The translations under genes and the position numbers were made by a program. From NCBI RefSeq assembly GCF_006345805.1, contig NW_021828906.1, forward strand, positions 1-7,375: a DNA stretch of 7,375 nt. Direction: 5' to 3'. The DNA is from Octopus sinensis. Taxonomy: Eukaryota. Each line of letters begins with the position of its first letter. Position 1 is the first letter of the stretch. Of this stretch, positions 1,451-1,585 are shown piece after piece. The notes under the pieces were generated by a model. That model did not search any database and had not been told where the DNA came from. It saw only the letters and a program-made list of their open reading frames with translations.

Positions 1451-1497
1451 AAAACCTGTTACTCTGAGTTTCCCGTTGCCGTTCATCGGACAGTTTT
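1451..1497 (-). ncRNA. Minimal type I hammerhead ribozyme-like motif (variant core CCGAUGA)
   Basis: Minus strand reads AAAA-CTGT-CCGATGA-ACG-GCAA-CGG-GAA-ACTC-A-GAGT-A-ACAG-G-TTTT. Stem I is CTGT/ACAG (extendable by AAAA/TTTT), stem II has a GNRA loop, stem III is palindromic, and the cleavage triplet is GUA. Confidence 0.7.
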
Positions 1498-1539
1498 TGC
1501 TAGATTTTAGCAAGATTCTAGTTTTGCTAGATTCTAGCA

Positions 1540-1585
1540 AAAACTGTCCGATGAACGGCAACGGAAACTCAGAGTAACAGGTTTT
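1540..1585 (+). ncRNA. Second hammerhead-like motif (1-nt deletion at the base of stem II)
   Basis: AAAA-CTGT-CCGATGA-ACG-GCAA-CG-GAA-ACTC-A-GAGT-A-ACAG-G-TTTT; the predicted cleavage site would lie between 1576 and 1577. Confidence 0.6.

What the first reader, a model, noticed from the sequence alone, without database searches (positions are those of the whole stretch)
1451..1585. Pair of oppositely oriented minimal hammerhead ribozyme motifs with a non-canonical CCGAUGA core
Seen in sequence: both arms fold as type I hammerheads, with stem I CUGU/ACAG (plus AAAA/UUUU around a bulged G), core CCGAUGA, short stem II with a GCAA tetraloop, GAAA, palindromic stem III ACUC-A-GAGU and a GUA cleavage triplet. 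Established knowledge: minimal type I hammerheads with palindromic stem III occur in Penelope-like element pLTRs and are proposed to cleave as dimers. Inference: this is a cephalopod Penelope-like or retrozyme-like family carrying a U4-to-C core variant, which strict CUGANGA searches would miss. Both copies are one change from an ideal ACG/CGU stem II (CGG in one, CG in the other), so these particular copies may be impaired.
Basis: partly seen in the sequence, partly recalled or inferred. Interest (0 to 1): 0.85.

Follow-up and report, generated by a model that had tools for sequence, protein, structure and literature searches.

The report
Truncated Penelope retrotransposon carrying twin hammerheads
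The two mirror-image hammerhead ribozyme motifs are real, but they are an ordinary by-product of how a Penelope-like retrotransposon inserts: two short, head-to-head copies of its tail in a TA repeat, here from a sub-lineage with one changed core base.

Summary
Window 1425-1612 is a near-perfect palindrome, and each arm carries a minimal type I hammerhead (HHR) with core CCGAUGA.

It is not a MITE or a retrozyme. It is a minimal insertion of an abundant Penelope-like element (PLE). The parts are a heavily 5'-truncated copy on the minus strand (about 1505 to 1352, including a 73-nt 3' tail), an abutting inverted 5'-truncated copy without the tail (1531-1612), and (TA)n on both sides.

Full copies in the same genome have an inverted copy, a pLTR, a 711-aa RT/GIY-YIG ORF and a 3' region with the same HHR and tail.

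Related PLEs from other organisms carry the same HHR. They show compensatory changes in all three stems, an invariant catalytic core, a free N7, and H17 that is never G. A covariance model built only from those foreign sequences finds both window arms (E about 1e-8 to 1e-9).

U4-to-C is not family-wide. The ORF-bearing majority lineage has canonical CUGAUGA (2732 exact copies). The window's sub-lineage has C4 (1128 copies), which is most parsimoniously derived. Cleavage was not tested. At this locus the 85-bp hairpin and the missing partner copy make activity unlikely. This is a new member of a known kind.

The parts
1333..1351 (.). (TA)n microsatellite, left flank of the insertion (target site)
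   Evidence: Read directly. All aligned genomic copies are bounded by (TA)n on both sides.
1352..1424 (-). 73-nt 'tail': the extreme 3' end of the PLE, read on the minus strand (...GTTTACTCCGG-3'). It is present only on the direct copy.
   Evidence: 97-99% identical to L080 1520-1592 and 4873-4944, which follow the hammerhead arm in the upstream pLTR and at the 3' end of a full-length copy. It is absent from the inverted copy, L080 128-1358. It is present on one side only in 34 of 38 aligned copies.
1425..1505 (-). Body of the direct, heavily 5'-truncated PLE copy (sense = minus strand). It holds the hammerhead about 36 nt upstream of the tail.
   Evidence: Colinear with the L080 3' region 4791-4872. 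Left arm of the palindrome.
1450..1499 (-). Minimal type I hammerhead motif, sense on the minus strand. Core CCGAUGA is at 1489 to 1483. Predicted cleavage is between 1460 and 1459.
   Evidence: Descriptor hit 1493-1456. Hit of the foreign-sequence covariance model at 1455-1494, 32.6 bits, E = 2e-9.
1506..1530 (.). Junction filler between the two 5'-truncated copies, made of fragments of the CTAGCAA motif.
   Evidence: The centre differs in length and sequence between genomic copies, while the arms stay colinear with the PLE 3' region.
1531..1612 (+). Inverted 5'-truncated PLE copy (sense = plus strand). It ends at ...TTTAAATAAG and has no tail.
   Evidence: Right arm of the palindrome. Corresponds to the tail-less inverted copy of full insertions, L080 128-216.
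1538..1590 (+). Minimal type I hammerhead motif, sense on the plus strand. Core CCGAUGA is at 1548-1554. Predicted cleavage is 3' of 1576. It has a 1-nt deletion after stem II relative to the sub-lineage consensus.
   Evidence: Descriptor hit 1544-1580. Covariance-model hit 1543-1581, 29.7 bits, E = 2e-8.
1613..1655 (.). (TA)n microsatellite, right flank of the insertion (target site)

Best explanation
Window 1352-1612 is a dead-on-arrival insertion of a Penelope-like retrotransposon (PLE) into a (TA)n microsatellite.

A PLE's GIY-YIG endonuclease cuts the target, and reverse transcription is primed on both DNA strands from internal sites near the 3' end of the element's RNA. This mechanism is taken from the literature and was not tested here. 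It gives two cDNAs that face each other. In the window one starts at the very 3' end, so it carries the 73-nt tail (minus-strand copy, about 1505 to 1352). The other starts at the inner site, so it has no tail (plus-strand copy, 1531-1612). Both were truncated about 85-95 nt in and joined head to head, which makes the palindrome.

Each stub still contains the element's minimal type I hammerhead, which lies 36 nt upstream of the inner start site. That is why two hammerheads point outward on opposite strands.

In full-length copies the same hammerhead sits in the upstream pLTR and in the 3' region. It is the conserved PLE ribozyme, thought to self-cleave precursor RNA as a dimer through its palindromic helix III.

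The window's copy comes from sub-lineages whose template RNA carried U4-to-C. This was a change in the master copy, because both arms share it. U4C is known from another system to lower hammerhead activity.

At this locus the motif is a passenger. No second sense copy is available for a dimer, and the 85-bp hairpin would out-compete the ribozyme fold.

What is shown: the anatomy, the family link, the ORF, and the cross-species structural conservation. What is inferred: the priming mechanism, self-cleavage, the dimer, and the effect of C4.
For: 1. Family and boundaries.
- At least 40 scored copies of 439 candidates share the unit (TA)n | 73-nt tail | palindrome | (TA)n, and the centre is variable.
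- The arm extended inward occurs 1872 times in the genome and 0 times in the reversed control.

2. Link to a PLE.
- Long copies share about 2.5 kb. Next to them lies an inverted copy whose length varies from 115 to 1237 bp.
- In L080 the inverted copy is 128-1358, the pLTR 1357-1596 repeats 4710-4948, and an intact 711-aa ORF lies at 1660-3795. The ORF has YRDDG and a C-terminal GVVY...YTGAS...RFYSH motif.
- The hammerhead arm is at 4791-4872, followed by the tail and (TA)n.
- The ORF family has 20,426 first-look candidates. 124 were scored, with open frames up to 766 aa.
- A profile of the ORF clade aligns colinearly over 565 columns with an ORF that carries Pfam RVT_1 (4.6e-10) and GIY-YIG (6e-6). 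HHalign probability is 95.8%, E = 7.7e-9.

3. The hammerhead is real.
- Nine related PLEs from other organisms (43-57% aa identity) carry the same motif next to their ORFs. Some are on the opposite strand upstream and some are in head-to-tail tandems.
- In the 13-sequence alignment, 88.3% of cells are paired against 75.9% in shuffles. Nine of 12 pairs have changes on both sides, which 0 of 500 shuffles reach. Slid controls give 26-49% paired.
- C3, G5, A6, G8, A9, G12-A14, A15.1 and U16.1 are invariant. N7 takes all four bases. H17 is A, U or C and never G.
- The model built only from foreign sequences finds both window arms at E = 2e-9 and 2e-8, and finds the canonical L080 copies at 38.6 bits.

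4. Orientation.
- In the listed genome hits, all 23 inverted pairs closer than 300 bp are in the order minus then plus, so the hammerheads point outward.

5. Literature.
- Inverted 5'-truncated copies, a one-sided tail and microsatellite targets are described in PMC8557442.
- Two internal reverse-transcription start sites that define the tail, with both strands cut and extended, are described in PMC11167929.
- Minimal hammerheads in pLTRs and 'dual min-HHRs ... in opposite strands' 100-700 bp apart are described in PMC4209133.

6. Dimer prediction.
- The RNAcofold minimum of two canonical copies forms the extended intermolecular helix III, with both cores unpaired and stem II hairpins intact (-24.0 kcal/mol).
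Against: - No Rfam hammerhead model matches, even for canonical-core arms.
- The isolated arm does not fold into the hammerhead as its minimum-energy structure, and it is no more stable than shuffles (z = -0.6 and 0.1).
- Stem II is only 2 bp plus a GNRA loop, and the usual G10.1-C11.1 pair is missing.
- U4 is replaced by C in the window's copies. U4C 'considerably decreases activity in vitro' in a viroid hammerhead (PMC3088659).
- The octopus ORF has no Pfam hit of its own, so its RT/EN assignment rests on motifs and a profile comparison.
- The tail is 73 nt, whereas 30-40 nt is described for other PLEs.
- No cleavage or expression data exist here.
- In the one PLE studied in vitro, hammerhead mutants inserted normally and no RNA-seq reads ended at the cleavage site (PMC11167929). 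The ribozyme's role in transposition is therefore itself uncertain.
Confidence: 0.88

Rival explanations
1. It is a MITE: a short non-autonomous DNA transposon with about 85-bp terminal inverted repeats and a TA target-site duplication. On this reading the hammerhead-like motif is incidental.
For: - Near-perfect palindrome.
- TA-rich flanks.
- Hundreds of short copies.
- Pairs of inverted arms 2-5 kb apart that could look like an autonomous element with TIRs.
Against: - The unit is asymmetric. A 73-nt unique segment lies outside the inverted repeat on one side only, in nearly all copies.
- The inverted part varies from about 85 to 1237 bp between insertions and is always colinear with the 3' end of one element.
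- That element encodes RT plus GIY-YIG, not a transposase.
- Direct pLTR repeats exist.
- No ORF matched a transposase family.
Confidence: 0.03
2. The motif in this family is a conserved RNA element of PLEs that is no longer a ribozyme, or never was one. It could be a protein-binding or reverse-transcription-start structure. In the C4 sub-lineages in particular it is catalytically dead, and the element spreads without it.
For: - The C4 sub-lineages still reached 1128 exact copies or more and split into at least three variants.
- Copies are young, at 2.75% mean divergence from the sub-lineage consensus.
- Hammerhead mutants of the Anolis PLE insert normally in vitro, and Naiad PLEs thrive without hammerheads (PMC11167929, PMC8557442).
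- PLE minimal hammerheads cleave poorly in vitro (PMC4209133).
- In the C4 + G11.1 sequence the predicted dimer minimum pairs CCG of the core with CGG, which would sequester the core.
Against: - Across the clade, exactly the catalytic nucleotides are invariant. N7 is free and H17 avoids G. This pattern is specific to selection for cleavage, not just for a fold.
- The U4C viroid variant retains enough activity in vivo for infectivity (PMC3088659).
- The majority, ORF-bearing lineage keeps canonical U4.
Confidence: 0.35
3. The short palindromic unit is itself a propagating non-autonomous element (retrozyme-like or SINE-like). It would be copied as a unit by the PLE machinery, rather than being made anew at each insertion.
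For: Many copies share the same centre junction. This is the 161-bp class L015-L022, and it shows as 30-42 bp spacing of the 23-mers. Either strand of such a palindrome ends in the inner reverse-transcription start sequence.
Against: - The same junction class occurs in both the U4 and the C4 lineages, and it sits at the palindromic CTAG. This fits a recurrent template-switch or annealing hot spot.
- Centres vary widely otherwise.
- There are no tandem arrays, which define animal retrozymes (PMC7229834 abstract).
- The tail is on one side only, as expected from fresh two-site priming.
Confidence: 0.12
4. It is a chance resemblance: a hammerhead-like string in a repeat, with no family-level meaning.
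For: - The core departs from the consensus at U4.
- There is no Rfam hit.
- Relaxed descriptors do hit random sequence, at 0.045 per shuffled window.
Against: - The foreign-sequence covariance model hits both arms at E about 1e-8 to 1e-9.
- The same motif lies at the same place in nine other PLEs, with compensatory changes.
- Canonical-core copies are the majority in this genome.
Confidence: 0.01

Closest known systems
Minimal hammerheads of metazoan Penelope-like elements (Cervera & de la Pena 2014, PMC4209133)
   Same: - Type I topology with an open, loop-less helix I.
- A tiny, palindromic helix III that implies action as a dimer.
- Location in the pLTR / 3' region of an RT + GIY-YIG element.
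- Thousands of mostly solitary or truncated copies.
- 'Dual' motifs on opposite strands about 100 bp apart.
- An unpaired nucleotide 5' of stem II.
   Different: - Helix II is only 2-3 bp with a GNRA loop, whereas 6-8 bp is described.
- The 10.1/11.1 position is a mismatch (A.A, A.G, U.U) instead of the 'highly conserved G10.1-C11.1'.
- The window's sub-lineage has C at position 4.
PLE insertion architecture: pLTR, inverted 5'-truncated copy, one-sided tail, microsatellite targets (Craig et al. 2021, PMC8557442; Frangieh et al. 2024, PMC11167929)
   Same: All four features are seen in this family's full copies and, in miniature, in the window. Insertion is into (TA)n.
   Different: - The tail is 73 nt rather than 30-40 nt.
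- (TA)n preference was reported for Naiads, which have an N-terminal EN and no canonical hammerhead. This element has a C-terminal EN and a hammerhead.
- The clade within PLEs was not assigned.
Animal non-LTR retrozymes (Cervera & de la Pena 2020, PMC7229834; Li et al. 2026 preprint 10.64898/2026.07.22.740005)
   Same: Type I hammerheads of PLE ancestry in short non-coding repeats.
   Different: Retrozymes are head-to-tail tandem arrays whose transcripts self-cleave and circularise. Here there is a single inverted pair with no tandem repeat.
Natural U4C hammerhead core variant in a viroid (cited in Perreault et al. 2011, PMC3088659)
   Same: The same single core change (U4 to C) in a natural hammerhead.
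   Different: The viroid variant was shown to keep biological function despite reduced in vitro cleavage. Nothing has been measured for the octopus variant, which also lacks loop-loop tertiary contacts that could compensate.
Rfam Hammerhead_1 (RF00163) and other Rfam hammerhead models
   Same: Same core and three-way junction.
   Different: No Rfam model reaches E<=10 on these sequences. They are too minimal for the curated models.

Membership tests
Hammerhead ribozyme, type I | Conserved core C3 U4 G5 A6 N7 G8 A9 / G12 A13 A14 / A15.1-U16.1 / H17 | tested here: not met
   In the window's two copies every core position fits except position 4, which is C. The same family's majority lineage and all 9 foreign relatives have the full canonical core.
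Hammerhead ribozyme, type I | Three helices around the core, supported by covariation; 5' and 3' ends in helix I | tested here: met
   In the 13-sequence alignment, 88.3% of cells are paired against 75.9% in shuffles. Nine of 12 pairs change on both sides (0 of 500 shuffles reach this). Slid controls give 26-49%. The element order is I - core - II - GAAA - III - UH - I.
Hammerhead ribozyme, type I | Match to a curated Rfam hammerhead covariance model | tested here: not met
   No hammerhead family at E<=10 in the whole window, in a single window arm, or in a single canonical-core arm of L002.
Hammerhead ribozyme, type I | Site-specific self-cleavage 3' of H17 | not testable with these tools
   This needs in vitro transcription or mapping of RNA ends.
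PLE minimal hammerhead (Cervera & de la Pena 2014) | [quoted passage not shown] | tested here: inconclusive
   There is an A (octopus) or U (relatives) between A9 and the first Watson-Crick pair of stem II. In most sequences a matching unpaired base sits on the 3' side, so it can equally be read as a 10.1/11.1 mismatch.
PLE minimal hammerhead (Cervera & de la Pena 2014) | Highly conserved G10.1-C11.1 pair | tested here: not met
   Only L085 has G-C at that position. Octopus has A.G, A.A or A-U, and most relatives have U.U (pair 14-37 is unpaired in 10 of 13).
PLE minimal hammerhead (Cervera & de la Pena 2014) | Palindromic positions 15.2-16.2 / loop 3, implying a dimeric helix III | tested here: met
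   ACUC-A-GAGU in octopus. ACUCGAGU (perfect), ACUU-A-AAGU and ACAG-A-CUGU in relatives. The cofold minimum forms the intermolecular helix III.
PLE minimal hammerhead (Cervera & de la Pena 2014) | Same RNA family as hammerheads of related PLEs (non-circular model test) | tested here: met
   Model R1 was built from 9 non-octopus sequences. Window hits are at E = 2e-9 and 2e-8, and the next hit is at 0.1.
Penelope-like element (EN+) | Single ORF with reverse transcriptase and GIY-YIG endonuclease | tested here: met
   [quoted passage not shown] HHalign gives 95.8% probability, E = 7.7e-9, over 565 colinear columns to an ORF with Pfam RVT_1 + GIY-YIG. The ORF's own Pfam scan is empty.
Penelope-like element (EN+) | pLTR (partial tandem), adjacent inverted 5'-truncated copy, one-sided tail | tested here: met
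   In L080, 1357-1596 repeats 4710-4948, 128-1358 is the inverse of 3651-4879, and the tail is on the direct copies only. The inverted copy has variable length in L070-L079.
Penelope-like element (EN+) | Hammerhead in the pLTR / 3' region | tested here: met
   L080 has hammerheads at 1451-1488, 4804-4841 and 203-166(-).
Animal non-LTR retrozyme | Head-to-tail tandem array of hammerhead-bearing units | tested here: not met
   There is one inverted pair only. No tandem repeat covers 1352-1612.
MITE / TIR DNA transposon | Symmetric termini with a target-site duplication, and a transposase-encoding partner sharing the TIRs | tested here: not met
   The 73-nt segment is on one side only. The partner element encodes RT/GIY-YIG.

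The most novel reading that the evidence does not exclude
The C4 (U4-to-C) hammerhead is not a dead relic. On this reading it is a working ribozyme, attenuated or dependent on other factors, that is maintained in an actively transposing PLE sub-lineage. That sub-lineage has at least 1128 exact copies, at least three sub-variants, and copies about 3% diverged. The same change recurs independently in an unrelated PLE (L086 2614-2658). Position 4 would then be a natural tuning site for retroelement self-cleavage, and strict CUGANGA descriptors would systematically under-count animal hammerheads.
Probability: 0.2. Interest if true: 0.5.

Novelty: new member of a known kind. Interest (0 to 1): 0.3.

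Why it matters
It turns an eye-catching 'double ribozyme' into a textbook example of how Penelope-like elements insert: two internal reverse-transcription starts, head-to-head truncated copies, a one-sided tail and a microsatellite target.

It documents three things:
- A very abundant, apparently recently active PLE family in this genome, which looks like an octopus genome.
- An ORF clade that Pfam does not recognise.
- A hammerhead that is more minimal than the published PLE descriptor and is invisible to Rfam.

The practical value is for annotation. Such palindromes are easily mis-called as MITEs or miRNA-like hairpins.

It also offers a natural matched pair for testing what the PLE hammerhead is for: lineages with U4 and with C4 that use the same protein machinery.

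Tried and rejected
- **Rfam scans.** The whole window, ten loci and two single arms gave only generic miRNA-hairpin matches caused by the palindrome, and no hammerhead.
- **Half copies.** The 'half copies' L037-L039 were expected to lead to a longer element. They turned out to be internally deleted short copies.
- **Pfam.** Scans of ORF fragments from long copies and of the intact ORF gave nothing, even at E<=10. A PDB sequence search gave only noise. Pairwise BLASTP to a bona fide PLE ORF was marginal (E = 0.008 and 0.033). Only the profile comparison was convincing.
- **MITE / TIR-transposon reading.** Considered after one search showed inverted arms 2-5 kb apart. Rejected on asymmetry and ORF content.
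- **Missing record.** One homologue (P0027) was not on record.
- **Energy evaluation.** My hand-written monomer hammerhead bracket string was mis-registered (+18.6 kcal/mol), so that number is discarded. Only the cofold minimum is used.
- **tRNA scan.** It found nothing in the window.
- **Not attempted.** I did not assign the PLE clade (Penelope/Poseidon, Neptune, Nematis or Hydra). I did not build a sub-lineage phylogeny to polarise C4 against U4 beyond outgroup parsimony.
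Full report
**1. Checking the observation**

On the plus strand the order is:
- stem I, CUGU 1544-1547, preceded by AAAAA
- core CCGAUGA, 1548-1554
- an unpaired A
- CG / GCAA / CG, 1556-1563
- GAAA, 1564-1567
- ACUC-A-GAGU, 1567-1575
- A17 at 1576
- ACAG-G-UUUU

The minus strand carries the same motif from 1499 to 1450, with A17 at 1460 and one extra G after stem II.

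The two motifs are the arms of a palindrome at 1425-1612. The arms are 94% identical. The palindrome folds as one hairpin of -153.4 kcal/mol, z = -30.

A descriptor that leaves position 4 free finds only these two sites in the window. It gives 0.045 hits per dinucleotide-shuffled window, and 0.004 if stem III must have 4 bp.

Rfam gives no hammerhead hit at E<=10, neither for the window nor for a single arm. An isolated arm does not adopt the hammerhead as its minimum-energy fold.

On the window alone, though, its meaning is open.

**2. What the palindrome belongs to**

The genome is G000: 2.72 Gb in 13,516 contigs. It is not named by the tools. An octopus is my inference from the repeat content and assembly statistics.

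The genome holds many copies. Aligning 38 of them shows a sharply bounded unit:
- (TA)n
- a 73-nt unique segment, CCGGAGTAAACA...TAATATGC (window 1352-1424)
- the palindrome, ending ...CTTTAAATAAAG
- (TA)n

The unique segment is on one side only. The centre of the palindrome differs in length and sequence between copies, while the arms stay colinear. This asymmetry already argues against a MITE.

Extending one arm inward (ATATCGGTTCCATTCTAGCAAAAACTGTC) gives 1872 genomic matches and none for the reversed control. Many occur as minus/plus pairs 2-5 kb apart.

Ten such regions share about 2.5 kb of sequence. In each, a longer copy abuts an inverted copy whose length varies from 115 to about 1000 bp.

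The 5' part of the longer copies encodes a protein fragment with YRDDG and a GIY-YIG-like C-terminus. Searching the genome with it gives 20,426 first-look candidates. 124 were scored at 83-100% identity, with open frames up to 766 aa.

**3. A full copy**

L080 is G000:C17:13931300-13937300. Its layout, is:

| L080 coordinates | Feature |
|---|---|
| 128-1358 | Inverted 5'-truncated copy; reverse complement of 3651-4879, 98.5% identical |
| 1357-1596 | Direct repeat of 4710-4948, i.e. a pLTR |
| 1660-3795 | Intact 711-aa ORF |
| 4791-4872 | Hammerhead arm in the 3' region |
| 4873-4944 | The 73-nt segment, ending ...CTCCGG, then (TA)n |

The inverted copy ends at ...AAATAAAG without the 73-nt segment.

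This is the published PLE insertion architecture: a partial tandem forming a pLTR, an adjacent inverted 5'-truncated copy, a 'tail' at one end only, and microsatellite targets (PMC8557442). The tail is explained by two internal reverse-transcription start sites, with both target strands cut and extended (PMC11167929).

The window therefore holds the smallest version of that structure. PLE sense is the minus strand:
- Direct copy, about 1505 to 1352, with the tail.
- Inverted copy, 1531-1612, without the tail.
- A 25-nt filler between them.

In the genome hit lists, all 23 inverted motif pairs closer than 300 bp are in the order minus then plus. The hammerheads point outward, as head-to-head joining of 5'-truncated cDNAs predicts.

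**4. Is the ORF a PLE protein?**

Pfam finds nothing in the octopus ORF, even at E<=10. PDB sequences give only noise.

The protein has 1076 homologues at E<=1e-5 among the 8000 candidates scored. Most come from marine ENA/Logan assemblies, and one is from the bivalve Solemya velum.

One ENA contig (L086) carries a different ORF next to such a homologue. That ORF passes Pfam's thresholds for RVT_1 (4.6e-10) and GIY-YIG (6e-6).

A 23-sequence profile of the octopus clade aligns with that ORF colinearly over 565 columns, from the N-terminal region through the RT to the GIY-YIG motif. HHalign probability is 95.8%, E = 7.7e-9.

I accept RT plus C-terminal GIY-YIG. The PLE clade was not assigned.

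**5. Is the hammerhead real?**

I fetched contigs for nine homologous ORFs from other organisms. Each has the same minimal type I motif next to the ORF. In L082 and L084 there is an additional copy on the opposite strand upstream. In L085, L088 and L090 the elements are head-to-tail tandems with one motif per spacer.

Examples:

| Source | Hammerhead sequence |
|---|---|
| Octopus, ORF-bearing lineage | CUGU CUGAUGA A CG GCAA CG A GAAA CUCAGAGUA ACAG |
| L082 | UCUGU CUGAAGA U CGC GAAA GCG U GAAA CUCAGAGUU ACAGA |
| L087 | CCGU CUGAUGA U CGC CUUGA GCG U GAAA CUUAAAGUA ACGG |
| L088 | GUCAU CUGAGGA U CGC CUA GCG U GAAA CAGACUGUU AUGGC |
| L085 | CUGU CUGAUGA GUGC GUAA GCAC GAAA CUCGGAGUA ACAG |
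| L089 | UGCAU CUGACGA U UGUACAU ... AUGUACA U GAAA CUCGGAGUA AUGUA |

In the 13-sequence alignment:
- C3, G5, A6, G8, A9, G12, A13, A14, A15.1 and U16.1 never vary.
- N7 takes all four bases.
- H17 is A, U or C and never G.

For the three-helix structure:
- 88.3% of cells pair, against 75.9% in shuffles.
- Nine of 12 pairs show changes on both sides; 0 of 500 shuffles reach this.
- Sliding the 3' partners drops pairing to 26-49%.

As a non-circular test I built a covariance model from the nine foreign sequences only.
- It finds the two window arms at 32.6 and 29.7 bits (E = 2e-9 and 2e-8), with the next hit at E = 0.1.
- It finds the three L080 motifs at 38.6 bits.

The motif is a conserved hammerhead of this PLE clade. 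Its conservation pattern is the one expected under selection for catalysis.

Compared with the published PLE minimal hammerhead (PMC4209133):
- It shares the open helix I, the palindromic helix III, the location and the unpaired base 5' of stem II.
- It differs in having a much shorter stem II and no G10.1-C11.1 pair.

**6. The C4 core**

The window's CCGAUGA is not the family's state.

In the fetched loci the ORF-bearing and long copies have CUGAUGA ... CGA GAAA ... ACAGA. This holds for all three motifs in L080 and for 15 of 21 in L070-L079. The window's variant (CCGAUGA ... CGG GAAA ... ACAGG) and two relatives (CCGAUGA ... CGU; CCGACGA ACGGGAACGU) dominate the short copies first retrieved.

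Genome-wide, exact 23-mers give 2732 canonical and 1128 C4 copies, and none for the reversed controls.

Both arms of the window copy share C4, so the change was in the template RNA and is not post-insertion decay.

C4 copies are young: mean divergence from the sub-lineage consensus is 2.75%, against 1.8% for the canonical lineage. Some extend into the ORF's 3' end, with a 3' UTR only 76-85% identical to L080. They therefore represent a separate sub-lineage.

All nine foreign relatives have U4, so C4 is most parsimoniously derived. A reversal through CpG decay cannot be excluded.

U4C is a known natural variant in a viroid hammerhead. It 'considerably decreases activity in vitro' but remains sufficient in vivo (PMC3088659).

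An unrelated PLE on L086 (2614-2658) also has a well-formed minimal hammerhead with CCGAAGA.

The C4 sub-lineages nonetheless proliferated. That fits two reported facts: hammerhead mutations do not affect PLE insertion in vitro (PMC11167929), and hammerhead-less Naiads thrive (PMC8557442). It also fits residual activity. The data here cannot tell these apart.

**7. How it works at this locus**

Shown here:
- the anatomy
- membership in the PLE family
- the conserved RNA structure

Inferred, from PMC11167929 and the one-sided tail:
- two-site, two-strand priming
- 5' truncation
- head-to-head joining

Inferred, from the literature and the conservation pattern: self-cleavage 3' of A17, as a dimer through helix III. 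The cofold minimum of two canonical copies does form the intermolecular helix III with open cores.

At this locus the motifs are most likely inert passengers, for four reasons:
- Any one transcript contains one sense and one antisense copy, so no dimer partner is available.
- The 85-bp hairpin would out-compete a fold worth about -10 kcal/mol.
- The core carries C4.
- The plus-strand copy has an extra 1-nt deletion next to stem II.

**8. Comparison and verdict**

The nearest known things are the PLE minimal hammerheads, including the reported 'dual min-HHRs in opposite strands' 100-700 bp apart, and the PLE insertion architecture.

It is not a retrozyme, because there is no tandem array. It is not a MITE.

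Novelty: a new member of a known kind.

Interest is modest. It is a clean illustration of PLE biology, an annotation trap (MITE or miRNA-like hairpin), a hammerhead too minimal for Rfam, and a natural U4/C4 pair of lineages for testing what the PLE ribozyme does.

Noticed in passing
L086 2614-2658 (+), ENA contig ERZ1755870 NODE_1402: An unrelated PLE, whose ORF passes Pfam thresholds for RVT_1 and GIY-YIG, has a well-formed minimal hammerhead with the same U4-to-C change: GGGCGA CCGAAGA A GGCC UUACU GGCC GAAA CGCAUGUA UCGCCC. This suggests the variant recurs in PLE hammerheads. It is a single copy, so decay cannot be excluded.
   Followed up: partly
L080 1660-3795 and homologues P0002-P0121: The 711-aa RT/GIY-YIG ORF clade has 1076 homologues at E<=1e-5 among the 8000 candidates scored, mostly in marine metagenome and Logan assemblies. 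It gets no Pfam RVT_1 or GIY-YIG hit even at E<=10. Only a profile-profile comparison links it to a recognisable PLE ORF.
   Followed up: partly
Genomic copies L015-L022 and others; 23-mer spacings of 30-42 bp in the hit lists: Many short inverted insertions, in both the U4 and the C4 lineages, share the same centre junction at the palindromic CTAG just 5' of helix I (the 161-bp class). This could be a recurrent template-switch or annealing hot spot, or amplification of the palindrome as a unit. It is unexplained.
   Followed up: no
L085, L088, L090 (ENA contigs): Homologous PLEs in other organisms sit in head-to-tail tandems. ORFs are only about 320-400 bp apart, with one hammerhead per spacer. 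This is the arrangement in which dimeric self-cleavage to unit length would be possible.
   Followed up: partly
window 1662-1860, 3089-3258, 3903-4100; inverted 6805-6996 and 7255-7375: There are several copies (83-90% identical) of a roughly 200-nt repeat that I read as a tRNA-derived SINE (GGAGTGGCTGTGTGGTAAG...GGTTCAGTCCCAC...). One lies directly after the (TA)n tract that flanks the PLE stub. ARAGORN calls no tRNA.
   Followed up: no
window 2579-2906 and 5348-5793: Two tandem arrays of unknown nature: 109 nt x 3.0 copies (96% matches) and about 95 nt x 4.6 copies (68% matches).
   Followed up: no
window 1480-1557 and equivalent places in other copies: The palindrome draws sub-threshold Rfam matches to many miRNA precursor families (MIR6217, mir-19, mir-8, MIR837 and others). 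These are generic long-hairpin matches and are a likely source of false miRNA annotation.
   Followed up: yes
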